Shown one piece after another: positions 593 to 63,820 of a stretch of 64,000 nucleotides of DNA. The stretch spans positions 62,001 through 126,000 of the IMG/VR virus record IMGVR_UViG_3300030329_004647. The stretch is one strand, 5' to 3'. Each line of letters starts with the position of its first letter. Positions within the stretch are counted from its first letter, which is position 1. The translations under genes were made by a program, and so were the position numbers. Under the pieces are notes generated by a model, which saw only the letters and a program-made list of their open reading frames with translations, was not told the DNA's origin and ran no database searches.

Positions 593-624
593 CAAAGATA
601 CGAAAATAGTCCTAAACAACCAAA
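593..624 (-). promoter_or_regulatory. Bacteroidota sigma-A-type promoter
   Basis: Minus strand TTTG (624-621), N20, TATCTTTG (600-593). Confidence 0.75.
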
Positions 625-971
625 GAAAATAAGTTTAAAAACATTAGTCTTTTGGTTGAAGGTAAGTACCCCGCTCCTTGCAATATAAAGAGGTTTTTAG
701 AGAGTTTCTAGATATTTATATATAGTTACTTAACTAACCCATAACCTATTCCATAACCCCCTTATTTTATCGTATTCCACATATTACCACTTTCTACCAC
801 CATTTACCACTATAATTCCCTATAGTGATATTGTTAGAGGGAATTTCACACAATATGACACTATGTATATAGGAGGTAAAAACCGTCAAAGGGTCTGTGT
901 CGTCCGCGAAGTGTGACTGACATTCTGACAAAGTCAAGTATTTCGACCACTATTTACTAACAAAATTCCCC

Positions 972-986
972 CTGACAATGTGTCAG
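972..986. repeat. perfect inverted repeat CTGACA-atg-TGTCAG, candidate operator
   Basis: Read directly. Related TGACA half-sites at 856-868 and 918-936. Confidence 0.5.
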
Positions 987-1150
987 AAGGGTTTTATAAA
1001 GGGAAAATATATGGTACCATAACGGGTAGTTACTAACAACGACAAATAGTCATGTGTTTTATTTGGCCATGTCAAAAAAAAGTTGTACCTTTAGGTTGTG
1101 GGAGGGTGGGTAGTATACTATTAAAAAGGAGTTTAGGGACAAAAAAAATA

Positions 1151-1540
1151 TCACCATCTGTGATATCTTTTCTTCGGTGGGTATACATCTGTACAACTAG
1201 AGTCCTTACCGAACTTAATCGTCTTAAGTTTTACACTAGTAGGGAATCCCCATAGACGGGTCCAAGAACTTACTAAGTTACCCACACCATTATATTCTCT
1301 ACGTAGGAAAGTTCTAATATCTTTAATCCCATAAGTGTGACATCCTCTCCATCCCCCATTAACACATTGTACTTCAGCATGTACAGTGATATCCACTTCT
1401 GTGTAAGGTCTACCCCATCTTGGGTTTACTTGTCTCGCTCTAGTTACTCTTACGTTAAGGTTTCTAATATACCCTCCGTCGTTCCCCCTCAGCAGGGAGG
1501 TCTGTAGTTTCTTATTTAATTGTCTCTTGGTCATATTCAT
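1151..1540 (-). CDS. hypothetical protein
   Basis: 129-aa ORF; ATG lies 4 nt after a TATCTTTA -7 box. Confidence 0.75.
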   Translation of the reverse strand: MNMTKRQLNKKLQTSLLRGNDGGYIRNLNVRVTRARQVNPRWGRPYTEVDITVHAEVQCVNGGWRGCHTYGIKDIRTFLRREYNGVGNLVSSWTRLWGFPTSVKLKTIKFGKDSSCTDVYPPKKRYHRW

Positions 1541-1544
1541 ACTG

Positions 1545-1576
1545 TAAAGATACGAATTTAATTCCGTACTACCAAA
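1545..1576 (-). promoter_or_regulatory. Bacteroidota sigma-A-type promoter (likely leaderless)
   Basis: TTTG (1576-1573), N20, TATCTTTA (1552-1545), CAGT, ATG. Confidence 0.65.
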
Positions 1577-1641
1577 ATAATATGGGGTTTTTTTAAAATA
1601 AAAAGCAGGGTGTCCCCTTATGGTCCGTCCACATCTTAATA

Positions 1642-1673
1642 CAAAGATACAAAAAATATTTTAACTATACAAA
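1642..1673 (-). promoter_or_regulatory. Bacteroidota sigma-A-type promoter with no large ORF directly downstream
   Basis: TTTG (1673-1670), N20, TATCTTTG (1649-1642). Confidence 0.7.
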
Positions 1674-11756: not shown

Positions 11757-12464
11757 CTAGTCCAAAGAAATTATATCACTAATTTTTTTACCACTACCTA
11801 CAATAGTGTACGGTTTTAAAGAACTATTACCACTACTACCTTTTATTCCCTTATATTGTAAAACAATACCGTTATTGTACATTTTATTATGTGTTGTAAA
11901 AGGTTCATCCATAAAATGATAACACCCGTCGGATGTGACCTTAACGGTTACATCATTTCCTTTATACTTTCTACTTAAAAACAACTCATCTACCTCTAAC
12001 TTTGAACATAATTCAACAATTCTAGGGTCACCATCCGTACTTTCTAACTTATTTACCAAATTTCTACGATTTTCTAAGTTTTCATTAGTACCACTTTGTG
12101 TTAATGAAGAAATTTTTGTGATTTTTACTCCAGGAATTCTATTTAAAGAGTTTAACCCCCTTGTTACACACGTATAAAAAGATGATTTACCTATTTTGTC
12201 GGTATTAAACCACTCATTTCTATCATAACGAAATAAATGAAAGAAAGAATGACATATAGATTCGATGATTTGAGCTGGATTTTCCACACCTTCTATAGAA
12301 ATTTCCCATACACTTGTCATTTCATACTTAATAGGACCATTTGTATTGGTTAATTCTTTTTCTCGTTGGGTGTAATCCTTTGTTAAACCTATTTTTACAT
12401 CATTTGAGATAAAATTTTCATCTGTTTGGTGAAAATACTCACCAGTGTATATATATTTTTTCAT
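11757..12464 (-). CDS. GIY-YIG / T5orf172-like domain protein
   Basis: KIGLTKDYTQREKELTNTNGP...YEMTSVWEI...IESICHSFF...NEWF pattern. Confidence 0.7.
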   Translation of the reverse strand: MKKYIYTGEYFHQTDENFISNDVKIGLTKDYTQREKELTNTNGPIKYEMTSVWEISIEGVENPAQIIESICHSFFHLFRYDRNEWFNTDKIGKSSFYTCVTRGLNSLNRIPGVKITKISSLTQSGTNENLENRRNLVNKLESTDGDPRIVELCSKLEVDELFLSRKYKGNDVTVKVTSDGCYHFMDEPFTTHNKMYNNGIVLQYKGIKGSSGNSSLKPYTIVGSGKKISDIISLD

Positions 12465-12468
12465 ATTA

Positions 12469-12476
12469 CAAATATA
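12469..12476 (-). promoter_or_regulatory. Bacteroidota -7 box (likely leaderless transcript)
   Basis: TATATTTG-TAAT-ATG; no clear -33 TTTG. Confidence 0.55.
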
Positions 12477-12506: not shown

Positions 12507-12538
12507 TTTGGTATTATTGAAACAAATTATTATCTTTG
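12507..12538 (+). promoter_or_regulatory. Bacteroidota sigma-A-type promoter
   Basis: TTTG (12507-12510), N20, TATCTTTG (12531-12538). Confidence 0.75.
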
Positions 12539-12586: not shown

Positions 12587-12823
12587 ATGTTAGAAATTAT
12601 CACGGGCTACTTAGTTTTATCAGTAATATTAATGATTATCTTTATTGAAATCAATAAAGAACAACTTTATGAACAGTATTTAGAGATTGAAGAAGAATAC
12701 TCTAGAAAACCTTCTAACAAGTGGTTTAATTTCTATATTTTTACTCACTTTTTAAAAGCTCCTATGTTGTGTCCTATGATATTTTTACTAATTTTAGGAA
12801 ATGGAGGTAAATTATTAAAATAA
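12587..12823 (+). CDS. hypothetical membrane protein
   Basis: Two hydrophobic segments. Confidence 0.65.
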   Translation: MLEIITGYLVLSVILMIIFIEINKEQLYEQYLEIEEEYSRKPSNKWFNFYIFTHFLKAPMLCPMIFLLILGNGGKLLK

Positions 12824-13477: not shown

Positions 13478-13509
13478 TTTGTTTATATCCTAATTTTTAT
13501 TTATCTTTG
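13478..13509 (+). promoter_or_regulatory. Bacteroidota sigma-A-type promoter
   Basis: TTTG (13478-13481), N20, TATCTTTG (13502-13509). Confidence 0.75.
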
Positions 13510-18702: not shown

Positions 18703-18734
18703 CAAAGATAATAAAAAAATCTTAAATAAACAAA
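18703..18734 (-). promoter_or_regulatory. Bacteroidota sigma-A-type promoter
   Basis: TTTG (18734-18731), N20, TATCTTTG (18710-18703). Confidence 0.75.
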
Positions 18735-18749
18735 AGATATTTATATAAA

Positions 18750-28089: not shown

Positions 28090-28091
28090 AT

Positions 28092-28123: not shown

Positions 28124-28528
28124 TGGTGGAGGTGGGGGGTTTCGAACCCCCGTCTTGCTCATCTTCAAAAAATATCTATCCTACACGTTTAGTTTATTCT
28201 ACCTATTCGATTATTTCTACAGAATAAACAACCCTAAAAATAACCTAGACTATCTAATGTTTAACCACTCAAATAGCGAGAGTAGGATTGATTTGTGTAA
28301 ATGACATTTCATAATTAAAGGAACAAATCTTAAGACCCTTTAAAGAAATGGAACCATAGGATAACCTAGTTATGCTACAGTCACAGCTGACTCCTCACGG
28401 ACAAGTCCTAAAGTCGCCAACTTAGCAAGTGTTTTGCCAGTTAAAAAAATGAATCAGTTTTACAAGCTTAATTCAGGCTTGACGTGCTGATATCAATCGA
28501 CTGATGCCAATCAATTCCAGTCACCCCC
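28124..28528 (-). ncRNA. ssrA: tmRNA (405 nt)
   Basis: 5' GGGGGUGACUGGAAUUGA pairs with 3' CACCUCCACCA, with a G3-U alanine determinant and encoded CCA; T-arm GGGGGUUCGAAACCCCC; internal tag ORF at 28438-28370. Confidence 0.93.
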
Positions 28529-28764: not shown

Positions 28765-28796
28765 CAAATATATACAAATTAATAAAAAGGACCAAA
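28765..28796 (-). promoter_or_regulatory. Bacteroidota sigma-A-type promoter
   Basis: TTTG (28796-28793), N20, TATATTTG (28772-28765). Confidence 0.7.
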
Positions 28797-33093: not shown

Positions 33094-33909
33094 TCAATTA
33101 AGTAAACTCCAAGTAGTAGGTTTATGTTTATAACTGTACTTATTTTCTCCTAATATATTTAAAAGTCTTTCACCTAACTTTATAGCGTTCTCCACATCCT
33201 CGACAACTACATATTCATAATTAGAGTGCCAGCCATAATAACCCGCTGCAAAATTTAAACAACTAAAATCAAACATTTCTTTTAATACCATAGTATCCGT
33301 ATACGGGTGATTTAACCAGTCAGTAATTCCATGTTCTAATATAATATCTTTACACTTTTCGATAAAGTCACCATCTTCCTTATACAACTTTACACCCATT
33401 AAGGTTTTACTCATAGTATTATTTTCAGTAGAATCAAACTGTATAGCGTATCCTACATCTTTAAAAAATTCTTTATCCGCTTGTCTGGTTCCTTGACAAC
33501 CTGTTTCTTCAGCGACTGGAAAAAACACTTTAACATTATCTAATTTGTCTAATAACTCTAAACAAATAAAAACCCCAGCTTTGTCATCACCCCCTATACC
33601 ACATCTATTACCATCATTATCGGAATACGCAACTAAAGATAGTTTTTTTTCGTCTTGAGCATTTAAATGATACTCCTCTTTTACAGTATAGTCTTGGATT
33701 TCATGCACACTATCCAAATGAGCCACCAAACACGGAAAATGTTTAGCATTACCCTTAGTCACATAAATCGAACCAAGCTTATCTATCTTATAGGAATAAC
33801 CCTTTTTATCTAAAATACCTGTAACATATTCTATTAATAAGTCTTCTTCCCAAGTATAGGTAGGTACTGATAAAATATTTTTAAGTTTTTTTATTGTTTT
33901 TTTATTCAT
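33094..33909 (-). CDS. M20/M28/M42-clan zinc peptidase
   Basis: AHLDSVH, GGDDKAG, AEETGC, IQFD and YHS-like C-terminal His motif. Confidence 0.85.
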   Translation of the reverse strand: MNKKTIKKLKNILSVPTYTWEEDLLIEYVTGILDKKGYSYKIDKLGSIYVTKGNAKHFPCLVAHLDSVHEIQDYTVKEEYHLNAQDEKKLSLVAYSDNDGNRCGIGGDDKAGVFICLELLDKLDNVKVFFPVAEETGCQGTRQADKEFFKDVGYAIQFDSTENNTMSKTLMGVKLYKEDGDFIEKCKDIILEHGITDWLNHPYTDTMVLKEMFDFSCLNFAAGYYGWHSNYEYVVVEDVENAIKLGERLLNILGENKYSYKHKPTTWSLLN

Positions 33910-33913: not shown

Positions 33914-33945
33914 CAAAGATAAATAAAAATTTTAATATAAACAAA
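33914..33945 (-). promoter_or_regulatory. Bacteroidota sigma-A-type promoter (likely leaderless)
   Basis: TTTG, N20, TATCTTTG, TAGT, ATG. Confidence 0.8.
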
Positions 33946-34777: not shown

Positions 34778-35664
34778 TGAAAAAGATAATTAAAAAAATA
34801 TTAAAAGAAGAGGTGGTAGATGTCACCCTATTCCAAGACGAAATATTCGACTTACCCCTAGAACAAAGAAAAGCTGTAATGAGTGGTTTGGAGGAGTTAT
34901 TGAAAAATAAAAATAATGATTCCGACTTACAAGAACAAATTTCTTACAAAGGTATTCCTGAAATAAAAGCTACAACCACATTTGGTAAAATTTTAAAATG
35001 GTTAAAAAGGTATATAACAGATAAAGCGACTAACTTTTTAATCAACGCCTCTATGAGTGAGGTTAAGGACACTATACAAATGTTAAAAGTTTTAGACCCT
35101 ACCGATATGCAAGGACTATTCAAACCAAAAGCAATGTATTTAGGAGGGGGGATTGATTTTGCTGAGGACGGAGCATCTTGGAGAACTAGAGTAGAGGAGT
35201 TCTATGGTCCAGACCATGTAGTTAAGGATGAACGACTACGTACATTAGTAACAACAGGAAAATTAAATTTTGGTGGTATAAAATATCCAGCTTTATTGAA
35301 TCCATTAAGAGCTGAAACGGTAAGAGCCGAAGACCCAACATTCCAGGAAATGTTTAAAAAATGGAAGGCAAATGAATTAAATGATGAAGACATGATTATA
35401 TTCCAGGAAAAAGTTAGAGAACAAATCGTACACCAAGATTTATATATGTTACAAGTTTGTGATACTAATCTAATTAGTTTTGATGGGACAGCGGGAGCTG
35501 GAACATTCGGTGAAGCTCAAATATCCGCCTTAAAAAATCAACAAGTTTTTATATGGTTAAATAAAGGTATGAAAATGTCTAATATTTCTCCTTGGTTATT
35601 TCCATCTATTACTAAAATATTAAAGGACGATGAACTATGGCCTTTCTTAAAACGACTAGGTTAA
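34777..35664 (+). CDS. nucleoside 2-deoxyribosyltransferase / dNMP N-glycosidase-like protein with N-terminal leader
   Basis: MYLGGGIDF...SWR, LNP, DLYMLQVCD, GAGTFGE pattern. Confidence 0.7.
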   Translation: MKKIIKKILKEEVVDVTLFQDEIFDLPLEQRKAVMSGLEELLKNKNNDSDLQEQISYKGIPEIKATTTFGKILKWLKRYITDKATNFLINASMSEVKDTIQMLKVLDPTDMQGLFKPKAMYLGGGIDFAEDGASWRTRVEEFYGPDHVVKDERLRTLVTTGKLNFGGIKYPALLNPLRAETVRAEDPTFQEMFKKWKANELNDEDMIIFQEKVREQIVHQDLYMLQVCDTNLISFDGTAGAGTFGEAQISALKNQQVFIWLNKGMKMSNISPWLFPSITKILKDDELWPFLKRLG

Positions 35665-36161
35665 TAATACTTAACCACCTTACGGTTTAAACTCCAAGTA
35701 AATTTATATTCTGCAGTAAACTTGTTATTGTTATGTTCTTTACAACATTTACCACAAGCTAACTCTCTTTTACTTTTTCTAGCGTAATACACATCCCTTT
35801 CACATTTAGGACAAGTAGCAATCCATTTCATTACCCTGGATTTATCAACACCACTATTACTAGTACATCTTTCACCACTACACCCAATAGACATAGCAAT
35901 TTTTCTCCAATTATTGTCATGATTAGAATAACCACGTTTTTTGTAATCCAAAGCGTGTGCGATTTCGTGTAAAATAGTATTTTTTACTCTAGACTCACTT
36001 GTTTCGTGTTGAGTCAAAGGTCTAGACAGTGAAAGAGTTTTAAGTCTACCATTATGACAACCAAATCTACGCACCGCTCTATCCCACTTAAAGGTGTAAT
36101 CAGATACTCCGTGTCTTCTCATTAGTTTAAGGGCCATATTTCTTGCTTTTTCTAAATTCAT
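35661..36161 (-). CDS. SprT-like zinc metalloprotease
   Basis: RRFGC, TILHEIAHAL, HDNNWRKIAMSIG, C-terminal CxxC...CxxC. Confidence 0.9.
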   Translation of the reverse strand: MNLEKARNMALKLMRRHGVSDYTFKWDRAVRRFGCHNGRLKTLSLSRPLTQHETSESRVKNTILHEIAHALDYKKRGYSNHDNNWRKIAMSIGCSGERCTSNSGVDKSRVMKWIATCPKCERDVYYARKSKRELACGKCCKEHNNNKFTAEYKFTWSLNRKVVKYY

Positions 36162-36622
36162 TTCTCAAAAGTTATTGTGTTAATTTTAATTCCGTCGTAA
36201 TGTCTACCACCTGTAATACCCATTAATTTTAGATAATCTTTAATTTCACCTTTTACTTTACTTCTTATTTCTTCTCTAATTCTTTTGTGACTTTGATATC
36301 CCCACGCAGGACTATAAGTAGATTCATATCCATCCCAGTAAGTTTTTTTACAACGAGTTAGTTTTTTAATATCTTGTTGAGTGTCATTATCACGGTCATA
36401 TCCTCTACCTGTACAGGCAGTACCCCTTACCTTCAAGTTTACTAATATTGTAGAGTACTCAGGATTGTAGATACTTCTATTACCCCACTCGTCGTCTAGT
36501 TTAATCCAAGTAATACGATATTCTATATTCATTCTCCCACCCCAGTGTTGATTTTCTCTGTTGTCAAAGGAGAATCTTTCTTCTTTAATAAGTCGTTGTA
36601 ATTTTTTAGGTAATGTTTTCAT
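36158..36622 (-). CDS. hypothetical protein
   Basis: 154-aa ORF; ATG 4 nt after the -7 box. Confidence 0.75.
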   Translation of the reverse strand: MKTLPKKLQRLIKEERFSFDNRENQHWGGRMNIEYRITWIKLDDEWGNRSIYNPEYSTILVNLKVRGTACTGRGYDRDNDTQQDIKKLTRCKKTYWDGYESTYSPAWGYQSHKRIREEIRSKVKGEIKDYLKLMGITGGRHYDGIKINTITFEK

Positions 36623-36626: not shown

Positions 36627-36657
36627 CAAAGATAATAAAAAAGTTTGTAGTATCAAA
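36627..36657 (-). promoter_or_regulatory. Bacteroidota sigma-A-type promoter (likely leaderless)
   Basis: TTTG, N19, TATCTTTG, TAGT, ATG. Confidence 0.8.
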
Positions 36658-48996: not shown

Positions 48997-49022
48997 AACA
49001 ATTATCTAAGTATTTATAGGTA

Positions 49023-50765
49023 ATGAACAAAGAACAATTAATACATGAGTACGCTAAGTGTTTTAAAAACACATCATATGCTATAGAGAGTTATCTAGAG
49101 ACATACGACAATACTCAAAGTAAATACGTTCCCTTTAAACTTTTTCCTGAACAGAAAAAGATGTTAAACAACTTTGAGAAGTATAATGAAAATATAACCA
49201 AAAAATATCGACAAGCTGGTGTGTCCACAGCAACCGCAGCCTGGATATCCAAACAACTACAATTCGCTTCTAAAACAAAACCAGAAAAAGTTCTGATTCT
49301 AGCTAATAAACTAGATACAGCTCAAGAATTAGCTAATAAAATTAGAGGATTTTTAAATCAATGGCCAGAATGGGTTAATGTTGGTTTTTCTAAAGAAAAA
49401 GATTCCCAAAGACATTATAAATTAAATAATGGATGTGAAGTTAAAGCTGTTGCCACCTCTGTAGATGCACTAAGAGGATATACACCAACCATATTGATAT
49501 TTGATGAAGCAGCCTATATTGAAGCTGGAGACGACCTATGGGCAGCATGTATGGCTTCATTATCTACAGGAGGTCAAGTTATCGTAATTTCAACACCAAA
49601 CGGTTATGATAAAATTTATTATGAAATATATGACCAATCTATTCAAGGAATGAATAATTTTCAAATATCAGAATTACATTGGGAAAACGACCCTAGATTT
49701 ACTAAAGATTTAGAATGGGTAAAAACTAAAGATATTGTACATTATATGTTAAATCGTGAAGATTATAACGATGATTTAAATATAAAAGAAGATGATTTAG
49801 ATAAGTATCCTTCTTTAATAAAAAAAGGATATAAACCATACTCTTCATGGTTTGAATCAATGTGTAAAAAGTTAAAGTTCGATAGAAGAAAAATATCCCA
49901 GGAATTAGAAAGTGCTTTTTTAGGTTCTGGTGATAATGTTATACCCATTGATACTATAGATAATATAAAAGAAAGAATGGTAGAGGAACCTAAAGAAAAA
50001 TATGCAAGTGGACAATTATGGGTTTGGGAAGAAGCTATTGTAGGACATAAATATATTATGGGTATAGACGTATCAAGAGGAGACTCTGAGGACTTCACCT
50101 CAATTGTGGTTATAGATTTTGAAGAAAGAAAACAGGTAATGGAGTATTTGGGAAAAATACCACCTGATTTAGCAGCGGACTTAGCTTTTAAATGGGGTAA
50201 TCTATATAAAGCTTACATCGTTATAGACATTACAGGAGGTATGGGCGTAGCTACATCAAGAAAATTACAGGAATTAGGTTATAGAGATTTATATGTAGAA
50301 GGAGCTAATACAGCTGATAAGTGGAAATACAATCCTAAACTATTAGAAAAAATACCAGGACTTAGTTTTAATAATAAAAGAACACAAATTGTTTCTGCTT
50401 TTGAAGAAGCTCTACGTCATGGTTTTAATGTTAAATCTCACAGATTATTAAATGAACTTTATACTTTCGTATATGTTAACGGTAAACCCAACCACATGAA
50501 AGGAAAACATGATGATTTAATCATGGCAATGGCTATGGCTATTTATGTTGGTGAAAGTTCTTTTTCACAACTTACAAAAGCTGATGAAATGACAAAAGCA
50601 ATGTTGGATAGTTGGGTTACACATAAAAAAGAAAATGATGAACAGTCAGTTGACCTAAGACCAGGTAGAGATTCTAACGTTCTAAACCCTCATATAACGC
50701 CACAAGCAACACAACAAGGGCTATATAGAGAGTATAGTTGGTTATTTGGAGCAAAACCTAAGTAA
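49023..50765 (+). CDS. terminase large subunit (T4 gp17-like)
   Basis: KYRQAGVST Walker A, LIFDEAA Walker B, ISTPNG motif III, GIDVSRGDSED and HDDLIMA nuclease motifs. Confidence 0.95.
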   Translation: MNKEQLIHEYAKCFKNTSYAIESYLETYDNTQSKYVPFKLFPEQKKMLNNFEKYNENITKKYRQAGVSTATAAWISKQLQFASKTKPEKVLILANKLDTAQELANKIRGFLNQWPEWVNVGFSKEKDSQRHYKLNNGCEVKAVATSVDALRGYTPTILIFDEAAYIEAGDDLWAACMASLSTGGQVIVISTPNGYDKIYYEIYDQSIQGMNNFQISELHWENDPRFTKDLEWVKTKDIVHYMLNREDYNDDLNIKEDDLDKYPSLIKKGYKPYSSWFESMCKKLKFDRRKISQELESAFLGSGDNVIPIDTIDNIKERMVEEPKEKYASGQLWVWEEAIVGHKYIMGIDVSRGDSEDFTSIVVIDFEERKQVMEYLGKIPPDLAADLAFKWGNLYKAYIVIDITGGMGVATSRKLQELGYRDLYVEGANTADKWKYNPKLLEKIPGLSFNNKRTQIVSAFEEALRHGFNVKSHRLLNELYTFVYVNGKPNHMKGKHDDLIMAMAMAIYVGESSFSQLTKADEMTKAMLDSWVTHKKENDEQSVDLRPGRDSNVLNPHITPQATQQGLYREYSWLFGAKPK

Positions 50766-56837: not shown

Positions 56838-58670
56838 ATGGGAGCATTATTAGAATCCGGAATGGTTGGTAACATTGGGTTAAAACACCTAAAAGTTATC
56901 AAAGAGGATACAATTAATAAATGGGACAAATTAGGTTTCCTTGATGGCCTTAAAGGTCATGGAAGAGAAAACATTGCTCAGCTTTTTGAAAATCAGGCAA
57001 CTCATTTAATCAATGAGGCGACTGCAGCTGACAACTCAGGTTCTTTCGAAACTGTAGTTTTCCCTATTATTAGAAGAGTATTCTCAAAATTATTAGCTAA
57101 CGAAATCGTATCTGTACAGGCAATGAACTTACCAATTGGTAAATTATTCTACTTCGTACCAAAAGTATCAAGTAGAGTTGGTGAGGGTGGTATGTATGAA
57201 GGTTTCGCTCCATTTGGAGCACCAGGTGCACCGGCAACACAAACGCCAAGTTCACCTACATCAGCTACAACAATAAACTTATATGACAACTTCTACGCAA
57301 CTAACGCACCAATGGGTGCTGAAGATGGTCTTTATGACATCTCAAAAGGTTCGTACTCAGGTTATATCACAACTAATCTACAAGTTATGGACTGGAACGC
57401 TTCAGCTCGTACTTTAGGTTATGCTGCGACTAACTCTACAACTGTAACGTCATTAACATCAACAACTGATTGTTTAAAATCTGTGATTATTGGAGTTACT
57501 GGATTCCAGTCAACAGGTGAAGGTAAATTAATCGGACCGATGGGTAACGAAATAGATACTGAAGATTTCTTATCTTCTTTAACTTTAATTACTGAAAACG
57601 CTACAACTTGTAAGTCAGGTTCAACTAACTATAACGCTGGTGACAACATGTTATTCAGAGTTGTTACTCAAAAATACGGTAGGTCAATTGCGAACCCAAC
57701 AAGTTCGAAAACATCTACAGCTTTCCCTGGTGGAGACTTTGACAGTATTTGTGATGTAACAGGTACAATTTACTTAGAGGCTGACCTTTCGTGTCCAGCT
57801 TGTATTAATTGTGACTCTGTAGACGGATATGTTTGTTCATACTACGCAAATCGTGAGTTCCAAAATGAAACATCACCATTTAGTGCAGCGTGGAGAGTTT
57901 ACAAAGACCTAGAATTTGAAGAAAAAATGGGTGAAGTTTCTTTCGACCTTGAATCTGTTACAGTTTCGGTTACTGAAAGAAAATTAAGAGCTCAATGGTC
58001 ACCAGAGCTTGCACAAGACGTGTCAGCATTCCATAATATCGACGCTGAAGCTGAGTTAACTGCTTTACTTTCTGAAGAAGTTGCTGCTGAAATCGATAGA
58101 GAAATCTTAAGAGACCTTAGAAAAGGAGCAGCTTGGGATTTAAGATGGGATTACAATGGATGGAAGAGATTCCAATCAGGTCAAGCACCATATACTCAAA
58201 AAGACTGGAATCAAACGTTAATCACTGCGGTTAACCAAATTTCAGCTCAGATTCACAAATCTACATTGAGAGGTGGAGCTAACTGGATTGTTTGTTCTTC
58301 TGAGGTATCTGCAATATTTGATGACTTGGAGTACTTCCACGTGTCAAATGCAGCACCAGACCAAGACCAATACAACATGGGTATTGAAAAAGTTGGAACT
58401 CTAGGAGGTAGATATACTGTATATAGAGACCCTTATTTCCCACCTAACCAATTATTACTTGGTCACAAGGGAACGTCATTACTTGACACAGGGTATGTTT
58501 ACGCACCGTATGTACCGTTACAATTAACACCAACAATGTATAATCCATTTAACTTTACACCAATCAAGGGTATCATGACTAGATACGCTAAGAAAATGGT
58601 TAACAACCGTTTCTATGGTAGAGTTACTATCGATGGAGTTAAAACATTCGATGTTAAAGAGTTAAGATAA
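56838..58670 (+). CDS. major capsid protein (T4 gp23-like)
   Basis: IVSVQAMNLP, RKLRAQWSPELAQD, EIDREILRDL, YAPYVPL, GIMTRY. Confidence 0.96.
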   Translation: MGALLESGMVGNIGLKHLKVIKEDTINKWDKLGFLDGLKGHGRENIAQLFENQATHLINEATAADNSGSFETVVFPIIRRVFSKLLANEIVSVQAMNLPIGKLFYFVPKVSSRVGEGGMYEGFAPFGAPGAPATQTPSSPTSATTINLYDNFYATNAPMGAEDGLYDISKGSYSGYITTNLQVMDWNASARTLGYAATNSTTVTSLTSTTDCLKSVIIGVTGFQSTGEGKLIGPMGNEIDTEDFLSSLTLITENATTCKSGSTNYNAGDNMLFRVVTQKYGRSIANPTSSKTSTAFPGGDFDSICDVTGTIYLEADLSCPACINCDSVDGYVCSYYANREFQNETSPFSAAWRVYKDLEFEEKMGEVSFDLESVTVSVTERKLRAQWSPELAQDVSAFHNIDAEAELTALLSEEVAAEIDREILRDLRKGAAWDLRWDYNGWKRFQSGQAPYTQKDWNQTLITAVNQISAQIHKSTLRGGANWIVCSSEVSAIFDDLEYFHVSNAAPDQDQYNMGIEKVGTLGGRYTVYRDPYFPPNQLLLGHKGTSLLDTGYVYAPYVPLQLTPTMYNPFNFTPIKGIMTRYAKKMVNNRFYGRVTIDGVKTFDVKELR

Positions 58671-58759: not shown

Positions 58760-61327
58760 ATGCCACAATTTAATATATCATCCGAAGAAAGGAATAGAAT
58801 TAGAGGTTTACACATTACAGAATCTAAAGATAAAAGAATCACTTCAGTCTTAAATGAAGCTAAGGCTTTAGAAGGTTGGTTCGGAAAAATGTTTGGTGGG
58901 AAAAAAAGAAAAGAAGACATATACAACATTCTTAAAGCCGGTGTACAAATTGGTAGTCCCCCACTCTATTTAGAAGATAGAAAAGAAAACCCTCCATATT
59001 ATACTGAAGAAGAAATTAAAAGATTCGCTAATTTCATGAATAAGTTAGATAGAGTTTTTGTTAATGAAAAAAAGGTAATAGAACTATTAAGAACAGGTGT
59101 GGGATTAGGACTAGAGGAATTGGATATATTAACAAGGATTTTATACGCGTCATCTACTGACCCAGAAAAACCACAAAATTTTACTGACGTGTTGGTGGCA
59201 TCAGGAGCATTTAATGAAAGAGAAAGTTACAATCTAGATAGAATATTAGATACTAATCTATCAGATTTAATGAAAAAAACAAAAAAACAAGATATTAAGA
59301 AACGAGACTGTATCGATACAAATCCATTTGATAAAGAGAATGAACCAAGAGAGTGGGCATGGTGTGACAACAAACTTAACCCAGAGGGTGATGTGCAAGA
59401 AACAGAAGATAGTTACGATTATCAGTTAAGTGAAGTTAATAGAATACGCGAGATAATGGGCCTTAAAATATTGACGGAACAAAAAGTAGGTAGTGTTATT
59501 ATGGTAGATGGGAGAGAAATGGAAGTTGTAGATTATATAAAACAAGAATTACCACCAATAAACGTAGGACAACAATTTGGGTCTGGACTGTATAATGTGA
59601 GTGGTGAGGTTAAAAAATCTTTAGATGGTCTAGTTAATAAAATGAAAAATTTCTTTAATAGAAAAGAAGTACAGGGAATAGTTTTTGATATAGACCTAGA
59701 AGGTGGAGCTTCACTAGTTCCAATCTCAGATGCGTTAGCAAGAAAATACGGTATAAGTACTAGTCTGTCTGATGCAGATAGAAATAAGTGGTTAGCTGGA
59801 AAAAGAGCTTCAGAAGTTAAAAAATATTTGGAAGCACAATTAGGTCAACTAGGAAACGTACAAATACCAGAACCAACAGTTACATTAGGTACAACAAAAT
59901 GGGATAAAAATAAAGGAGTTAATCACAAAGACTATACAGAAGAACAGTTTATGAATATTACTGTTAAAGCTGCGGGTAAAAGACAAGTATTAGAGGCTTT
60001 ACCAGCATTCTGTGAAAAAGGATTTGAACCAGAACAGGGAGGATTAGGTGACCCAAAAAGAGCATATAAGGTTTATAAAGGAAGAGGAAAAAAATTAAAT
60101 TTAGGTGCGGGAGAAGGTAAAATATGTTTATCATTTGACGCATTAACCGTTCCAGATATGTTTGAATTAACCTATAACGGAAAAACATATAGAAGTATGA
60201 ACTCAAAGACAGGTAAAGCTGGATTCATATCAGGTAAGTATGATGAGATATCTGAAGAAGAGTTAGATAAATTTACAGCTATGTTACCCGAAATACAAGA
60301 TGAAATAGCTAAATTAACTGGTGATATACAATTAGCACAAGACGCTTTAGAGTCTGTAGGGCCTGAACAAGAAGCAAAATTAGAAGAAATACTCCTAAAA
60401 CAACAAGAAGAATTAGAAAAAAGTATAGAAGATACCAACAGAAAAATGAAAAAGTATGGGTATAACTTATCAATACCAGTAAAAAATCATAGAAGTAGAA
60501 AAAAATGGGATGATTATATTATGCATTATGGCGACCCTAATACAGGATACCCAAATGCTGTAACACCTAATTGGTATTGGGAAGAAGGTCAATATACGAT
60601 AGATGACACTCCTTTCGCTGGACCTGGTAGTGATAAAAGACCCGAAGAATTTTTTAATATGGCCGACGAAGGAGAAGTAAATGGTGAGTGGTTTAATCGT
60701 TTCTTTAACAAATATAGATATGATAACTCTAAAAAAATTAAAAGAAGTACAGGGTTTAAAACATTGTGGGCAAATAGACCAACTAATAAAGATTGGAAAA
60801 AAGATGATGTTGCAGCCTTTTTCCTTGGTATGAGAAGATTAGAAAAACAACTATTTAGAAATCAAGACGCAAAAAGAGACGAACTAGCTAAGTCTATTAA
60901 AAAAATGAAAAGAGATTACGAAAATAGAATTGAAAACTTATCTAGTAATATTGAAAAAGAAACTCGAAGATTACAAAATGAGTTAAATAAAAATATTAAA
61001 ACACTTAATGATTCTAAAGGAGAAGCTGAACTGTCTAAGAAAATGACAGAGTATAAACTAAGAACAGGTACTAAAGGAATGTACAAGTTTGATGAGTTAT
61101 TAAAAGAAATATTAGCTGATTCGTACGGTGGTAGAAAAAATGTTCCAGATATTATAGGACCTAAAGGTACTATTACTTTTGATAAAGTATTAGGGAAAAA
61201 TGAAGCTTATCTACAAGTTATAGCTCCTATAGGTGGTACATTATGGGCGGTACAAGTAGGTTGTGGTGACAAATGTAAGGGATTAGTTGATAATCCAGTT
61301 ACATATGATAGGGGAACACAAGCTTAA
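58760..61327 (+). CDS. large protein with two class A leaders and an OmpA-like domain
   Basis: MPQFNISSEERNRIRGLHITES; internal LSEVNRIREIMGLKILTEQ; FGSG...IDLEGGAS...NKWLAGKRASEVKKYL. ATG 58760 preferred over 58721. Confidence 0.75.
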   Translation: MPQFNISSEERNRIRGLHITESKDKRITSVLNEAKALEGWFGKMFGGKKRKEDIYNILKAGVQIGSPPLYLEDRKENPPYYTEEEIKRFANFMNKLDRVFVNEKKVIELLRTGVGLGLEELDILTRILYASSTDPEKPQNFTDVLVASGAFNERESYNLDRILDTNLSDLMKKTKKQDIKKRDCIDTNPFDKENEPREWAWCDNKLNPEGDVQETEDSYDYQLSEVNRIREIMGLKILTEQKVGSVIMVDGREMEVVDYIKQELPPINVGQQFGSGLYNVSGEVKKSLDGLVNKMKNFFNRKEVQGIVFDIDLEGGASLVPISDALARKYGISTSLSDADRNKWLAGKRASEVKKYLEAQLGQLGNVQIPEPTVTLGTTKWDKNKGVNHKDYTEEQFMNITVKAAGKRQVLEALPAFCEKGFEPEQGGLGDPKRAYKVYKGRGKKLNLGAGEGKICLSFDALTVPDMFELTYNGKTYRSMNSKTGKAGFISGKYDEISEEELDKFTAMLPEIQDEIAKLTGDIQLAQDALESVGPEQEAKLEEILLKQQEELEKSIEDTNRKMKKYGYNLSIPVKNHRSRKKWDDYIMHYGDPNTGYPNAVTPNWYWEEGQYTIDDTPFAGPGSDKRPEEFFNMADEGEVNGEWFNRFFNKYRYDNSKKIKRSTGFKTLWANRPTNKDWKKDDVAAFFLGMRRLEKQLFRNQDAKRDELAKSIKKMKRDYENRIENLSSNIEKETRRLQNELNKNIKTLNDSKGEAELSKKMTEYKLRTGTKGMYKFDELLKEILADSYGGRKNVPDIIGPKGTITFDKVLGKNEAYLQVIAPIGGTLWAVQVGCGDKCKGLVDNPVTYDRGTQA

Positions 61328-61851
61328 GGGTGAACCAAAATTAATACAGGGTAAGATGTTTGAGCGTAACGTGCTTGAATTACACTAACCGCTCCAATCG
61401 TTAAATTTCCACGACCCTCCAAATCAAATAACATAGCTTTTCTATGTCCTGGAGAATTAATCCAGTCATTAACTACTTGACGACATTCCTTTTCTAAATC
61501 AAGAGGCTCGTCAGTCCATGAATACAAAGGCAATCCAGCCATACATTCGGTACCCCAAGAATATGTACCACAATATTTTTTAATTCTCATTTGAGGGTCA
61601 TTTATTTCTTCATGTCCTTTTACATCAACAGTTTCACTATGTGAAAAATTTACTTCTTTATATGTCATGTAACTTGCGTGGTGATAAGCAGCTTTATAAG
61701 CGTCATTAGACCACTCTACGGCCTCCAAACCCTGTGATACCCTATATTCGTTTACCATTCTAAAAATAATTTGTTCTGCCTCACCTATACGTTGTTGTCC
61801 GTAAGAAGTAAAAGTTAAAATAGTAAGTAAGATTGTTATTAGTTTTTTCAT
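61324..61851 (-). CDS. secreted CAP (SCP-like) domain protein
   Basis: Signal peptide; IFRMVNEYRVSQGL, HHASYM, FSH, WINSPGHRKAML. Confidence 0.88.
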   Translation of the reverse strand: MKKLITILLTILTFTSYGQQRIGEAEQIIFRMVNEYRVSQGLEAVEWSNDAYKAAYHHASYMTYKEVNFSHSETVDVKGHEEINDPQMRIKKYCGTYSWGTECMAGLPLYSWTDEPLDLEKECRQVVNDWINSPGHRKAMLFDLEGRGNLTIGAVSVIQARYAQTSYPVLILVHP

Positions 61852-61855
61852 ACTA

Positions 61856-61886
61856 CAAATATAATAAATTTATTTTAAACTACAAA
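61856..61886 (-). promoter_or_regulatory. Bacteroidota sigma-A-type promoter (likely leaderless)
   Basis: TTTG, N19, TATATTTG, TAGT, ATG. Confidence 0.8.
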
Positions 61887-61944
61887 GATAATTGTAAGTA
61901 ATTATACGAGTTATTTTAAAGATAGTTTCAGATATTTATAATGT

Positions 61945-63204
61945 ATGAAGAGTAATTTATTATCTGAAATTAATCGTTTAAGGGGCATTATGGGTTTAAA
62001 GTTAATCCAAGAACAAGTCCAGTCACCACCTTATGACCTATATACCCAATGGGAAGGTTCTGGTGGAAAAGTTATAACATCTAAGGAATGGAGTGATAAA
62101 AAAATATTTAAAGCAGGTTTTATAAATTACATAGGTCCTTTTGGAGATAGAGGTTATGTTGTTTTAATGCCTGGTACAAAATATGTAGATGGAATTGGTG
62201 AGATATCTTCACCTGTTGTAAATTCTAAATACCCTCCTATCGGAGGAAATGTGGACAACCAATTATTTAAAATAGAAGATAGAAAATTTAGACCTGGTCA
62301 AAATAAAGTGTATGGGGGTGATTTGAAGTGGGCTGAAGGAAACCCACAAATTGACTTTATGAAATATCAAAATAACGATTTATGGGAGTTAGGCAGTCAA
62401 GCTAAAGCTTTACAATCTGATATGAATAGAGGTGGTGGTCAGACTAAAACTAGATTTCATTTTTTAGCTTACTCTCAAAGAACTAATGGTAACTTAAGAA
62501 TTCTAAACATAAATATTAGATTAAAAAACATAAAAGAATTAGAAGCAGAGGGTAAAACAGACAATACAAAAAAAGGTACTTTAAGCATTAACAATTATGT
62601 AAAACAACGTGGTGGTAATGCATGGCACTTAGAATATGGTTCAGCACCGTTAGCGACTTATGGACCTGGAAACATTAGTATAGAGGAAGATTTACCAGAA
62701 TTTGTTACCGACGAATACCAGTTTGATGCTGGTGAAAATTTTGATTTCGATTCTGCAGTTCTAACTCAATTAGCTAAAGACGCCATCAAAGAAAAAATTA
62801 TTGACGCTATAAATGAATTAGGAGAATATAAAAGTGCTTATTTAAAAGAATTAGGTAAAAAACCCGTAATAATCACAGCTTACTCTTCTATCGACGCAGA
62901 TTCTGAAACACCAGGTGGTGGTGGTGATTTTGGACCATGTCAAAGTATTAAAAAATCAGGAAAACGAAAAGATTATAATAAATGCCTTAGTCAATATAGA
63001 GCTAATACAGTTGTAAAACATCTCCAAGATAATTATTCGGATATATTTGGTAATGTTAAATTAAAAGGTATTGGAGGTGGTGAAAACCCATCTAAAAATA
63101 GTTGGAAACCAGGAAAAAAGAATCATGACTCTAAAACAACCCAAAAAGACCGTAAGTTTACAATTAAATTACCAGGATTTACTATACGAAGAAAAGTAGG
63201 TTAA
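61945..63204 (+). CDS. OmpA-like C-terminal domain protein with class A leader
   Basis: LLSEINRLRGIMGLKLIQEQ; FDFDSAVL...ITAYSSID...YNKCLSQYRANTVVKHL...GGGE...DRKFTI. Confidence 0.85.
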   Translation: MKSNLLSEINRLRGIMGLKLIQEQVQSPPYDLYTQWEGSGGKVITSKEWSDKKIFKAGFINYIGPFGDRGYVVLMPGTKYVDGIGEISSPVVNSKYPPIGGNVDNQLFKIEDRKFRPGQNKVYGGDLKWAEGNPQIDFMKYQNNDLWELGSQAKALQSDMNRGGGQTKTRFHFLAYSQRTNGNLRILNINIRLKNIKELEAEGKTDNTKKGTLSINNYVKQRGGNAWHLEYGSAPLATYGPGNISIEEDLPEFVTDEYQFDAGENFDFDSAVLTQLAKDAIKEKIIDAINELGEYKSAYLKELGKKPVIITAYSSIDADSETPGGGGDFGPCQSIKKSGKRKDYNKCLSQYRANTVVKHLQDNYSDIFGNVKLKGIGGGENPSKNSWKPGKKNHDSKTTQKDRKFTIKLPGFTIRRKVG

Positions 63205-63785
63205 TAAATGTAATTTCTTGATATTTGAAAGGAAGAGTATATAGCAAGATGTGTTTTACCCTTCCATGTGAATAAACCTAACTGAGTAGACCCAGAACCA
63301 ATACCCACAATACCATCCCCAACAGAAGCCCAGTTTTTTATGATAATTTGGTGCCCAGGAGAGTTGTCCCAAGAGTTAACTAAATAAGTAGCTAAGTCTT
63401 GGTAAGTGACAAATCTTTCAGAGGACACACATGTTAACATACTTACTTCTGAATATGCATCAACTTCATACTTTAATGTTTTATTTTGGTATTGTGATTG
63501 TATCTCATCATATACATCTACACTTATTTTATTTAATATATGTTTACCTTCAGGATGCCCAGCAGTTTGTTGTTCCACTAAAACACCTGTAATGTATGTA
63601 GATAAATTGTCGTGTAAAACATCAGAATAAACTAACTTTGGATTTCCGTACGATTCACGATAATCATTAATTTCTACAAATACTAAACTATCTATAAGTT
63701 CAGCATTAAAATTATTATAATCAATTACCTGTGAATAGGTTGTTAGTGTTATAAGAGTTAGTAATAATGTAATTAATTTTTTCAT
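63201..63785 (-). CDS. secreted CAP (SCP-like) domain protein, paralog of 61324..61851
   Basis: Near-identical signal peptide MKKLITLLLT...YSQ; INDYRESYG; WDNSPGH. Confidence 0.8.
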   Translation of the reverse strand: MKKLITLLLTLITLTTYSQVIDYNNFNAELIDSLVFVEINDYRESYGNPKLVYSDVLHDNLSTYITGVLVEQQTAGHPEGKHILNKISVDVYDEIQSQYQNKTLKYEVDAYSEVSMLTCVSSERFVTYQDLATYLVNSWDNSPGHQIIIKNWASVGDGIVGIGSGSTQLGLFTWKGKTHLAIYSSFQISRNYIY

Positions 63786-63789
63786 ACTA

Positions 63790-63820
63790 CAAAGATAATA
63801 AATTTTAATTAAACAACAAA
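63790..63820 (-). promoter_or_regulatory. Bacteroidota sigma-A-type promoter (likely leaderless)
   Basis: TTTG, N19, TATCTTTG, TAGT, ATG. Confidence 0.8.

What the first reader, a model, noticed from the sequence alone, without database searches (positions are those of the whole stretch)
593..63820. Host-type Bacteroidota promoters, six with the ATG 4 nt after the -7 box (leaderless early mRNAs)
Seen in sequence: TTTG-N19/20-TAnnTTT(G/A) occurs 11 times (593, 1545, 1642, 12507, 13478, 18703, 28765, 33914, 36627, 61856, 63790), plus a lone -7 box at 12469. Six read TA(T/C)nTTT(G/A)-N4-ATG, at starts 1540, 12464, 33909, 36622, 61851 and 63785; four of these have the identical spacer TAGT. Established: TTTG/TAnnTTTG is the Bacteroidota primary-sigma consensus. 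Inference: the host is Bacteroidota, and these early transcripts begin at or near the start codon. In three places (18731-18745, 33942-33956, 63817-63830) the -33 box abuts a divergent TATTTATA, which suggests a compact early/late switch.
Basis: partly seen in the sequence, partly recalled or inferred. Interest (0 to 1): 0.6.

Follow-up and report, generated by a model that had tools for sequence, protein, structure and literature searches.

The report
Start-codon-fused promoters in Bacteroidota jumbo phage
A large marine T4-like phage carries near-perfect copies of its Bacteroidota host's promoter, and half of them sit exactly four bases before an ATG, so those messages should have no leader. 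This layout is conserved in many related phages, but no transcript start has been mapped.

Summary
TTTG-N19/20-TAnnTTTG occurs 11 times in the window against 1.5 expected.

- **Source:** the window is bases 62001-126000 of a 232-kb marine viral contig. It is a T4-like jumbo phage with gp23-like capsid, portal and terminase genes.
- **Whole contig:** about 20 host-type promoters, 10 of them fused to an ATG at N4 (chance about 7e-13).
- **Published geometry:** in Flavobacterium the box lies at -12 to -5, with 4-5 nt to the start site. One F. johnsoniae gene with this geometry has its RNA-seq start on the A of the ATG.
- **Conservation:** orthologues at 38% identity keep the layout. So do 104 of 113 IMG/VR matches to the 19-mer, and five other 210-380 kb contigs.
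- **Host:** a Bacteroidota host is well supported. The 19-mer falls mostly in Bacteroidota genomes, genes lack Shine-Dalgarno sites, and PpsA is 61% identical to Tenacibaculum.
- **Second motif:** It peaks at N4 before the ATG, and a gp55-like sigma is encoded.

Start sites, early timing and the proposed switch remain inferred.

The parts
593..624 (-). Host-type promoter (-33 TTTG, -7 TATCTTTG). It is leadered, 37 nt before the ATG of a 69-codon ORF at 346-555 (-). A TATTTATA box at 577-584 lies between promoter and ATG.
1545..1576 (-). Host-type promoter variant (-7 TATCTTTA), then CAGT and the ATG at 1540. Predicted leaderless.
1151..1540 (-). 129-aa ORF starting 4 nt after the -7 box. No family match.
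1642..1673 (-). Host-type promoter in tandem, 101 nt upstream of the same ORF. No ORF of its own, and the 97-nt leader has no significant fold.
12469..12476 (-). Lone -7 box TATATTTG with no TTTG at -33, then TAAT and the ATG at 12464. Predicted leaderless.
11757..12464 (-). 235-aa ORF with a T5orf172/MUG113 domain, starting 4 nt after the box.
12507..12538 (+). Host-type promoter divergent from the one at 12469. It has a 48-nt leader to a 78-aa membrane-like ORF at 12587-12823.
13478..13509 (+). Host-type promoter with a 19-nt leader to a SAP-domain ORF at 13529-13807.
18703..18734 (-). Host-type promoter with a 27-nt leader to a 150-aa signal-peptide ORF at 18223-18675. Its -33 box abuts TATTTATA at 18738-18745 (+).
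28765..28796 (-). Host-type promoter with a 20-nt leader to a 66-aa basic ORF (28544-28744), followed by the tmRNA. Its -33 box directly touches TATTTATT at 28797-28804 (+).
28124..28528 (-). Phage tmRNA gene, the last gene of the unit driven by the 28765 promoter. A two-way terminator follows at 28092-28121.
   Evidence: (107.9 bits); an RNA-library contig covers 28183-28403
33914..33945 (-). Host-type promoter, then TAGT and the ATG at 33909. Predicted leaderless. Its -33 box is 3 bp from TATTTATA at 33949-33956 (+).
33094..33909 (-). 271-aa ORF resembling an M42/M20 peptidase, starting 4 nt after the box.
36627..36657 (-). Host-type promoter, then TAGT and the ATG at 36622. Predicted leaderless.
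35661..36622 (-). Two-gene unit. The 154-aa ORF (36158-36622) has no family match, and its orthologues at 38% identity keep the same promoter-ATG fusion. The second ORF is a 166-aa SprT-like metalloprotease (35661-36161).
61856..61886 (-). Host-type promoter, then TAGT and the ATG at 61851. Predicted leaderless.
61324..61851 (-). 175-aa secreted CAP-domain protein. Its signal peptide begins at the first ATG.
63790..63820 (-). Host-type promoter, then TAGT and the ATG at 63785. Predicted leaderless. Its -33 box is 2 bp from TATTTATA at 63823-63830 (+).
63201..63785 (-). 194-aa secreted paralogue of the CAP-like protein. Its signal peptide begins at the first ATG.
49011..49025 (+). Phage-type box TATTTATA, then GGTA and the ATG of the large terminase (49023-50765). 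It is one example of the second promoter class, which has about 30 sites in the window.

Best explanation
The window belongs to a marine T4-like jumbo phage whose host is a member of the Bacteroidota, most likely a flavobacterium. Its genes appear to be read from two kinds of promoter.

**Class 1: host-type promoters.** These copy the host's housekeeping promoter very closely: TTTG, 19-20 nt, TAnnTTTG, then usually TA-n-T-A. There are about 20 in the contig and 12 in the window. They drive short, isolated units, mostly on the strand opposite to the structural operons. Unmodified host RNA polymerase should recognise them, so by analogy with T4 they are probably the early class (inferred). In half of them the A of an ATG is the fifth base after the box. 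That is where Bacteroidota polymerase starts, so the message should begin with AUG and be translated without a leader (inferred from geometry and conservation).

**Class 2: phage-type boxes.** This is a single 8-bp box, TATTTAT(A/T), with no upstream partner. It precedes 58 genes, including terminase and portal. It resembles the T4 late box TATAAATA in 6 of 8 positions. It is probably read by host polymerase carrying the phage's gp55-like sigma (inferred). It shows the same sharp N4 spacing to the ATG at 11 genes.

In four places the two classes sit back to back with 0-3 bp between them. Polymerase bound at one would probably exclude the other (speculative).
For: **Motif reality.**
- 11 strict matches against 1.5 expected.
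- Sigma-70-type promoters are not enriched: 44 found, 50 +/- 7 expected.
- Contig-wide, about 20 sites are found and 10 have ATG at N4. All 10 open ORFs of 99-430 codons. The other spacings are 6, 19, 19, 20, 27, 34, 37 and 48 nt, and two sites have no ORF within 80 nt (the ORF after the tandem 1642 promoter begins 101 nt downstream). Binomial P is about 7e-13.

**Geometry.**
- The -7 box spans -12 to -5, with 4-5 nt to the start site (PMC6847099; PMC9723704).
- For F. johnsoniae Fjoh_0236, gene start and RNA-seq start are both 247015, and the G of the box TACTTTTG is at 247010.
- The fifth base after the box is A in 12 of 13 seed promoters, whether or not an ATG follows.

**True N-termini.**
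- Two of the six products begin with a signal peptide.
- M1 and K2 are invariant in both homologue alignments.

**Conservation.**
- Five orthologues at 36-38% identity keep -33, -7, N4 and ATG. One has a different spacer, TATT.
- 104 of 113 IMG/VR matches to the 19-mer open ORFs of at least 50 codons.
- Five other 210-380 kb contigs give 95 two-box hits (reversed control 39) and 19 N4-ATG hits (control 0), with eight different spacers.

**Host.**
- 32 of 43 genome hits to the 19-mer are Bacteroidota, and 23 of those open ORFs. Nine of the 11 other hits open none.
- Shine-Dalgarno-like words are not enriched: 5% against 9% background. A is enriched at -14 to -11 and at -3.
- PpsA is 61% identical to Tenacibaculum and 49% to Acinetobacter.
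- The nearest cultured capsid is from a Flavobacterium phage.

**Class 2.**
- 58 of 122 TATTTAT(A/T) copies lie within 45 nt upstream of a start in the right orientation. The figure is 3-16% for control 8-mers. Distances peak at 4 nt (11 sites) and 13-17 nt (25 sites).
- The box sits 3-4 nt before the terminase ATG in 53 of 71 orthologues at 64-89% identity.
- A gp55-like sigma is encoded: phrog_234 E 4.9e-5, Sigma70_r2 E 1e-5, PDB 7d7c gp55 E 0.0018.
Against: - **No 5' ends.** The only RNA runs were assembled contigs and covered just the tmRNA.
- **Start-site ambiguity.** The published box-to-start distance is 4 or 5 nt. A 5-nt start would fall on the T and lose the AUG.
- **Host baseline is low.** Leaderless mRNAs make up only 3.7-5.5% of mRNAs in Bacteroidota studied so far. 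The host machinery is therefore not known to favour them.
- **Timing is untested.** The products (secreted CAP-like proteins, a peptidase-like protein, SprT) are not classic early functions.
- **No terminators.** No intrinsic terminator follows the leaderless units.
- **Sigma hits are weak.** The Pfam score is below the curated cut-off.
- **T4 late geometry differs.** The T4 box lies at -13 to -6, one base further from the start than a leaderless N4 reading needs. The terminase spacing also varies between 3 and 4 nt.
- **Cultured relative lacks the motif.** Flavobacterium phage immuto shows no enrichment of the two-box motif.
- **The matrix is partly circular.** The scoring matrix was built from the same sites it then scores. 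The strict pattern counts are independent of it.
Confidence: 0.7

Rival explanations
1. The sites are real host-type promoters, but transcription starts at or after the T or G of the ATG. The first AUG is then absent, and translation begins at a downstream codon on a short leader.
For: Published spacing is '4 or 5 nt'. The 1540 gene has a second ATG two codons in.
Against: Two products need the first ATG for their signal peptide. M1 and K2 are invariant in homologues. Spacing is exactly 4 at 10 of 10 fused sites, with none at 0-3 or 5. A is conserved at the fifth base after the box. An F. johnsoniae gene with this geometry starts on the A.
Confidence: 0.1
2. The host-type promoters are not an early class. 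They are constitutive or 'moron'-like units read throughout infection, or in a carrier state, because they encode accessory secreted proteins and enzymes.
For: The units are isolated one- or two-gene cassettes on the opposite strand. Their products include secreted CAP-like proteins, a peptidase-like protein, SprT and a tmRNA. The tmRNA was the only part of the 6-kb stretch laid (28000-33999) seen in an RNA library.
Against: In T4-like phages, host-consensus promoters are the early class (established knowledge). Back-to-back placement with the late-type box fits temporal alternation. No integrase or repressor was looked for, so a temperate lifestyle is neither supported nor excluded.
Confidence: 0.2
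3. TATTTAT(A/T) is not a promoter. It is an A/U-rich translation-initiation or RNA-processing signal inside longer transcripts.
For: It lies 4-17 nt from start codons, where Flavobacterium genes carry an A-rich TAAAAA-type signal. Several copies sit in short gaps inside same-strand gene runs, such as 49011 before the terminase gene. No start sites are known.
Against: The 8-mer is far more specific than an A-rich tract. 48-63% of copies are correctly placed, against 3-16% for similar 8-mers. It matches the T4 late box in 6 of 8 positions and has no -35 partner, as expected for gp55-type promoters. A gp55-like sigma is encoded. It heads divergent units where no upstream same-strand promoter exists.
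Confidence: 0.15
4. The motif matches are chance products of an AT-rich genome, or the host is not a member of the Bacteroidota.
For: The genome is 32% G+C. The short pattern TANNTTTRNNNNATG alone is only about twofold enriched.
Against: 0 of 100 shuffles reach the observed count. The sites are intergenic and oriented towards genes. The 19-mer is concentrated in Bacteroidota genomes, including 57-59% G+C Alistipes, and opens ORFs there but not elsewhere. Genes lack Shine-Dalgarno sites.
Confidence: 0.02

Closest known systems
Bacteroidota primary-sigma (sigma-ABfr / sigma-A) promoters: -33 TTTG and -7 TAnnTTTG
   Same: Both boxes are present with 19-20 nt between them. There is no G at -10/-9. 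A T-rich tract lies around -18. The sites are intergenic and point at genes.
   Different: The phage copies are much closer to the full consensus than typical host promoters. In F. johnsoniae the -33 box was barely detectable. They also share an extended TTATTATCTTTGTAGTA core. Half are fused to the start codon, against 3.7-5.5% leaderless mRNAs in hosts.
Bacteriophage T4 early/late promoter scheme: host-consensus early promoters and a late box TATAAATA read by gp55 with gp33 and gp45
   Same: The structural genes are T4-like. A strong host-type class and a single 8-bp late-type box without a -35 partner are both present. A gp55-like sigma is encoded. The two classes lie largely on opposite strands.
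   Different: The host-type class follows the Bacteroidota rather than the sigma-70 consensus. The late box reads TATTTATA, differing at 2 of 8 positions. It often sits 3-4 nt from the ATG, which T4's -13 to -6 geometry would not allow for a leaderless start. gp33 and gp45 equivalents were not sought.
Leaderless mRNAs: lambda cI from PRM, and many genes in Actinobacteria, Deinococcus and archaea
   Same: A -10-type element lies a fixed few bases before an ATG, and only ATG is used. There is no ribosome-binding leader.
   Different: The promoter type is the Bacteroidota -7 box. The predicted share, about half of host-type promoters in one phage, is high for a phylum where such mRNAs are rare. 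The jumbo phages phiKZ and AR9 showed no leaderless transcripts when mapped.
Flavobacterium phage vB_FspM_immuto, the nearest cultured capsid relative (40% identity)
   Same: It has a T4-like capsid and a Flavobacterium host from brackish water.
   Different: Its genome shows no enrichment of the two-box motif or of box-N4-ATG: 3 against 6 control and 5 against 11 control. The layout therefore belongs to a narrower clade.

Membership tests
Bacteroidota sigma-A promoter | -7 element TAnnTTTG (TAHHTTTG, no G at -10/-9) | tested here: met
   11 of 12 window sites have it, with TC or TA at the nn positions. Site 1545 ends in TTTA.
Bacteroidota sigma-A promoter | -33 element TTTG, 19-20 nt upstream of the -7 element | tested here: met
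   11 of 12 window sites; 12469 lacks it. 11 found against 1.5 expected.
Bacteroidota sigma-A promoter | Lies upstream of genes and points towards them | tested here: met
   All 12 sites are intergenic. The ATG follows at 4-48 nt, or at 101 nt for the tandem 1642 site.
Bacteroidota sigma-A promoter | Restricted to Bacteroidota | tested here: met
   The 19-mer gives 32 of 43 genome hits in Bacteroidota, 23 with ORFs. Nine of the 11 hits elsewhere have no ORF.
Bacteroidota sigma-A promoter | Transcription starts 4-5 nt after the box, by host polymerase with sigma-A | not testable with these tools
   No raw RNA reads were available. It needs 5'-end mapping or in vitro transcription.
Leaderless mRNA | The 5' end coincides with the A of the start codon | not testable with these tools
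   The geometry fits, and there is a host precedent in Fjoh_0236, but this phage has no 5'-end data.
Leaderless mRNA | The start codon is AUG, not GUG or UUG | tested here: met
   All 10 fused sites use ATG.
Leaderless mRNA | The first ATG is the true N-terminus | tested here: met
   The signal peptides begin at Met1. M1 and K2 are invariant in alignments A1 and A2.
T4-type late promoter / gp55 system | A single 8-bp -10-type box with no -35 partner | tested here: met
   The base-frequency profile of the 58 sites shows no conserved upstream element.
T4-type late promoter / gp55 system | Box sequence TATAAATA | tested here: not met
   The box here is TATTTAT(A/T), matching 6 of 8 positions. TATAAATA itself is correctly placed in only 14% of its copies.
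T4-type late promoter / gp55 system | A phage-encoded gp55-like sigma | tested here: inconclusive
   Three weak hits agree on the 233-aa ORF at L117:1105-1806(-). They are phrog_234 E 4.9e-5, Sigma70_r2 at 21-23 bits (cut-off 24), and PDB gp55 E 0.0018.
T4-type late promoter / gp55 system | Precedes structural (late) genes | tested here: met
   The box lies before the terminase gene (49011), the portal gene (50775) and the operon containing the capsid gene (55354). It is conserved before terminase orthologues.
T4-type late promoter / gp55 system | gp33 co-activator and gp45 sliding clamp | not tested
   These were not searched for, and the contig is only 72% complete.
T4-like phage | gp23-like capsid, gp20-like portal and large terminase | tested here: met
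   phrog_138 E 8e-67, phrog_213 E 2e-65 and phrog_2 E 4e-40. 2,561 phage records matched the capsid, most of them T4-like.

The most novel reading that the evidence does not exclude
Leaderless expression may be a deliberate, clade-wide strategy of marine Bacteroidota jumbo phages. Both the host-sigma promoters and the phage-sigma TATTTATA promoters would be fused to start codons. A quarter or more of transcription units would then yield 5'-AUG messages that bypass the host's unusual leader-dependent, Shine-Dalgarno-free initiation. That could keep phage translation going when normal initiation is impaired. The back-to-back -33/TATTTATA pairs would act as mutually exclusive early/late toggles.
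Probability: 0.3. Interest if true: 0.7.

Novelty: new variant of a known kind. Interest (0 to 1): 0.5.

Why it matters
How Bacteroidota start translation is still poorly understood. They have no Shine-Dalgarno pairing, and leaderless mRNAs are rare in them.

This phage clade appears to use leaderless starts for about half of its host-type promoters. It would give a natural and easily cloned set of test cases: the 19-bp core plus ATG, for use in Flavobacterium or Bacteroides.

The sequences are also practical. They are compact, strong, phylum-specific expression signals, and they serve as a host-phylum marker for uncultured phages. The TATTTATA class extends the T4 late-promoter idea to phages of a different phylum.

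All of this is still predicted rather than measured.

Tried and rejected
- **RNA evidence.** The sequencing-run search found only DNA holders, plus three metatranscriptome runs kept as contigs. It showed one RNA-library contig on the tmRNA and nothing at the promoters, so no 5' ends could be read.
- **Cultured relative.** Flavobacterium phage immuto shows no enrichment of either pattern, so it cannot serve as a model.
- **Locus search with one protein.** The search with the 154-aa protein alone found nothing. An alignment of four homologues then worked. The CAP-like alignment was too divergent to search with.
- **Other promoters near the 19-mer hits.** An unbiased look in their flanks gave only 6 sites, too few to use.
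- **Relatives and ATATTTATW.** The count in five relatives is uninformative, because the tool's reversed-pattern control is almost the same motif.
- **Leader of the 1642 promoter.** The 97-nt leader has no significant fold (z = 0.02), so an sRNA or riboswitch reading is not supported.
- **Phage polymerases.** No multisubunit or T7-type RNA polymerase was found. The T7-family search had no positive control, and the contig is incomplete.
- **Literature.** Searches found no report of leaderless mRNAs in phages of Bacteroidota. This applies to the held library only.

Only genetic code 11 was used.

Full report
**1. What the window is**

The window is bases 62001-126000 of a 232,028-bp linear IMG/VR viral contig. 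CheckV rates it 72% complete, and it has 32% G+C. Runs that hold it are marine or seawater metagenomes dated 2014-2025.

It encodes a large terminase (49023-50765), a portal (50805-52640) and a gp23-like major head protein (56838-58670). The nearest cultured capsid relatives are a Microcystis phage (Mel-JY01, 42% identity) and Flavobacterium phage immuto (40% identity). Thousands of T4-like phages match more distantly.

It also carries several host-like genes:
- ppsA (13811-16282, minus strand)
- a ClpB-like ATPase (36675-38699, minus strand)
- dnaK (39041-40897)
- a tmRNA (28124-28528, minus strand)

It is therefore a T4-like jumbo phage.

**2. The observation**

The strict two-box pattern TTTG-N19/20-TAnnTTTG occurs 11 times against 1.5 +/- 1.2 in shuffles, and none of 100 shuffles reaches 11. 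The eleventh, at 60134, is inside a gene.

The loose form ending in G or A occurs 22 times, so 'occurs 11 times' holds only for the curated intergenic set.

The six box-N4-ATG sites are real, and each ATG opens an ORF of 129-271 codons. Sigma-70-type promoters are not enriched: 44 found against 50 +/- 7 expected.

**3. The promoter is more than the minimal consensus**

Aligned on the -7 box, 13 clean sites from the contig share an extended core. It reads TTTG, a T-rich tract near -18, then (T)TAT(C/A)TTTG and TA-n-T-A. The fifth base after the box is A in 12 of 13, whether or not an ATG follows.

A scoring matrix built from these sites finds about 20 intergenic sites in the contig. Nearly all lie in its first 126 kb. 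The matrix is partly circular, but the strict pattern counts are not.

**4. The spacing to the start codon**

| Spacing from box to ATG | Sites |
|---|---|
| exactly 4 nt | 10 |
| 6 nt | 1 |
| 19, 19, 20, 27, 34, 37 or 48 nt | 7 |
| no ORF within 80 nt | 2 |

One of the two sites without a nearby ORF is the tandem 1642 promoter, whose ORF begins 101 nt downstream. No site has a spacing of 0-3 or 5 nt.

All ten N4 ATGs open ORFs of 99-430 codons. With about a 1.9% chance of an ATG at a fixed position, ten of twenty has a probability of about 7e-13.

**5. Why N4 means leaderless**

In F. johnsoniae the box occupies T-12 A-11 ... T-8 T-7 T-6 G-5, with 4 or 5 nt between box and start site (PMC6847099). 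F. psychrophilum gives the same -12 to -5 placement (PMC9723704). With four spacer bases, +1 is the A of the ATG.

That paper's Table S2 has a direct precedent. For Fjoh_0236 the gene start and the RNA-seq-predicted start are both 247015. The box is TACTTTTG and its G is at 247010.

The first ATG is the true N-terminus in at least the secreted proteins. The products of 61324-61851 and 63201-63785 begin MKKLIT followed by a hydrophobic run. M1 and K2 are invariant in alignments of homologues.

**6. Conservation**

- **Orthologues.** Five orthologues of the 154-aa protein (36158-36622), at 36-38% identity, all keep TTTG, the box, four bases and ATG. One has a different spacer (TATT) and was found independently of the DNA pattern.
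- **IMG/VR 19-mer scan.** The 19-mer TTATTAT(A/C)TTTGTAGTATG occurs in 111 IMG/VR stretches. In 104 of 113 matches the ATG opens an ORF of at least 50 codons.
- **Other large contigs.** Five other contigs of 210-380 kb hold 95 two-box matches (reversed-pattern control 39). Nineteen are followed by N4-ATG (control 0), with eight different spacers of the form T-n-n-T.

The fusion is therefore a selected feature of a whole group of marine phages, not a quirk of this contig. Flavobacterium phage immuto does not share it.

**7. Host**

- **Taxonomic spread of the 19-mer.** Across one genome for each of 185,579 species it hits 43 stretches, 32 of them in Bacteroidota. These include Tenacibaculum, Aquimarina, Kordia, Chryseobacterium, Alistipes, Chitinophagaceae and Saprospiraceae, plus Ignavibacteria and Kapaibacteria as GTDB files them.
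- **ORFs at those hits.** In 23 of the 32 the ATG opens an ORF, even in Alistipes at 57-59% G+C. In 9 of the 11 hits elsewhere it does not. The other two look like phage DNA in a bin or a single-cell assembly.
- **Translation signals.** Phage genes show no Shine-Dalgarno enrichment (5% against 9% background). They have A-rich positions at -14 to -11 and at -3, the Bacteroidota pattern.
- **Host-like enzyme.** PpsA is 61% identical to Tenacibaculum and 49% to Acinetobacter.

A marine flavobacterial host is the best reading.

**8. The second motif**

TATTTAT(A/T) occurs 122 times in the contig. Fifty-eight copies lie within 45 nt upstream of a gene start in the correct orientation. That is 48% overall and 63% for ATATTTAT, against 3-16% for eight control 8-mers.

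No conserved upstream element accompanies it. It precedes the terminase and portal genes and the operon holding the capsid gene. Distances to the ATG peak at 4 nt (11 genes) and at 13-17 nt (25 genes).

Upstream of terminase orthologues at 64-89% identity, the box sits 3-4 nt before the ATG in 53 of 71 loci.

It matches the T4 late box TATAAATA at six of eight positions. A 233-aa ORF outside the window (contig 132924-133625, minus strand) gives three weak but agreeing matches to gp55 or sigma region 2. No phage RNA polymerase was found, but the contig is incomplete.

The most likely reading is a gp55-type late class. If the N4 copies also start on the A, leaderless messages extend to this class too. 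That needs a box-to-start distance one base shorter than in T4.

**9. Architecture**

Ten of the twelve host-type promoters in the window are on the minus strand. They drive one- or two-gene cassettes set between plus-strand operons.
- **3' ends.** These overlap or abut the stop of the upstream plus-strand gene by 0-4 nt. No intrinsic terminator follows them.
- **5' ends.** At four sites (18703, 28765, 33914, 63790) the -33 box lies 0-3 bp from a plus-strand TATTTAT(A/T).

This is compatible with mutual exclusion of two polymerase forms, but nothing here tests it.

**10. What is shown and what is inferred**

*Shown:*
- the motifs, their enrichment, placement and spacing
- their conservation in relatives
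- the phylum-specific distribution of the 19-mer
- T4-like structural genes

*Inferred from established knowledge:*
- recognition by host sigma-A
- a start on the A of the ATG

*Inferred by analogy:*
- early timing for class 1
- gp55-dependent late timing for class 2

*Speculative:*
- the early/late switch

**11. Novelty**

Host-type promoters in phages and leaderless mRNAs are both known. Mapped jumbo phages phiKZ and AR9 showed no leaderless transcripts. Bacteroidota hosts have only 3.7-5.5%. The held literature had no report for phages of this phylum.

The high, conserved share of start-codon-fused promoters and the TATTTATA late-type class make this a new variant of known kinds. It is of moderate interest until 5' ends are mapped.

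The reads tool was given 6,000 letters. Only genetic code 11 was used.

Noticed in passing
window 28092-28796 (-): A phage tmRNA (Rfam 107.9 bits) forms a unit with a host-type promoter at 28765, a 66-aa very basic ORF (28544-28744) and a two-way terminator at 28092-28121. ARAGORN reads an unusual tag, GKTLAKLATLGLVREESAVTVA. Within the stretch laid (28000-33999), only the tmRNA region was matched by RNA-library contigs: one exact contig at 28183-28403, and a 42-nt, 90-95% piece at 28115-28156 in a second run.
   Followed up: partly
window 13811-16282 (-), 36675-38699 (-), 39041-40897 (+): Host-like metabolism and protein-quality genes are present: PEP synthase PpsA (61% identical to Tenacibaculum), a ClpB-like double AAA+ ATPase that seems to lack the usual N-domain, and a full-length DnaK. 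dnaK matches 480-735 kb uncultured 'megaphage' records at 63-69% DNA identity.
   Followed up: partly
contig 132924-133625 (-) = L117:1105-1806 (-), outside the window: A 233-aa ORF gives weak but agreeing matches to T4 gp55 and sigma-70 region 2. It is the candidate reader of the TATTTATA boxes. The next gene downstream (L117:715-1086) starts 5 nt after a TATTTATA box.
   Followed up: partly
window 1541-1673 (-): Two host-type promoters lie in tandem before one ORF (1151-1540). The upstream one would give a leader of about 97 nt, and the downstream one none. The leader has no significant fold.
   Followed up: yes
window 38788-38816 (+): A single near-perfect sigma-70-type promoter (ATGACA, 17 nt, TATAAT, with TG) lies in the gap before dnaK. 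It is the only strong match in a region where such matches are not enriched. It may be chance, or a relic of the gene's origin.
   Followed up: no
window 61324-61851 (-) and 63201-63785 (-): These are two paralogous secreted proteins. One has a CAP/SCP domain, and both have a signal peptide ending in SYGQ or SYSQ. Homologues occur in tandem pairs in other IMG/VR contigs (for example L057), each with its own fused promoter.
   Followed up: partly
window 28813-33093, 24140-26836, 40970-43648 (+): Three very large ORFs (1,426, 898 and 892 aa) have no Pfam or PHROG match.
   Followed up: no
L162 (Acetivibrio MAG) and L164 (Prochlorococcus single-cell assembly): These are two non-Bacteroidota genome records that carry the 19-mer with an ORF. 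The first 20 residues of the L162 ORF are identical to those in viral contig L082. L164 is a 2.6-kb contig with a full -33 box. Both look like phage DNA that was mis-binned or co-sorted.
   Followed up: partly
window 28000-33999, run X11 (2025): A 2025 run from a coded 'organism A' holds 72% of the sampled words. Its contigs are 90-99% identical and carry many substitutions. Close relatives of this phage were therefore still circulating about 11 years after the 2014 samples.
   Followed up: no
contig 23-946 (+), outside the window: The first gene of the contig begins MNLGYACINMTLG. It also starts 4 nt after a host-type -7 box, and its orthologues in L008 and L020 do the same.
   Followed up: partly
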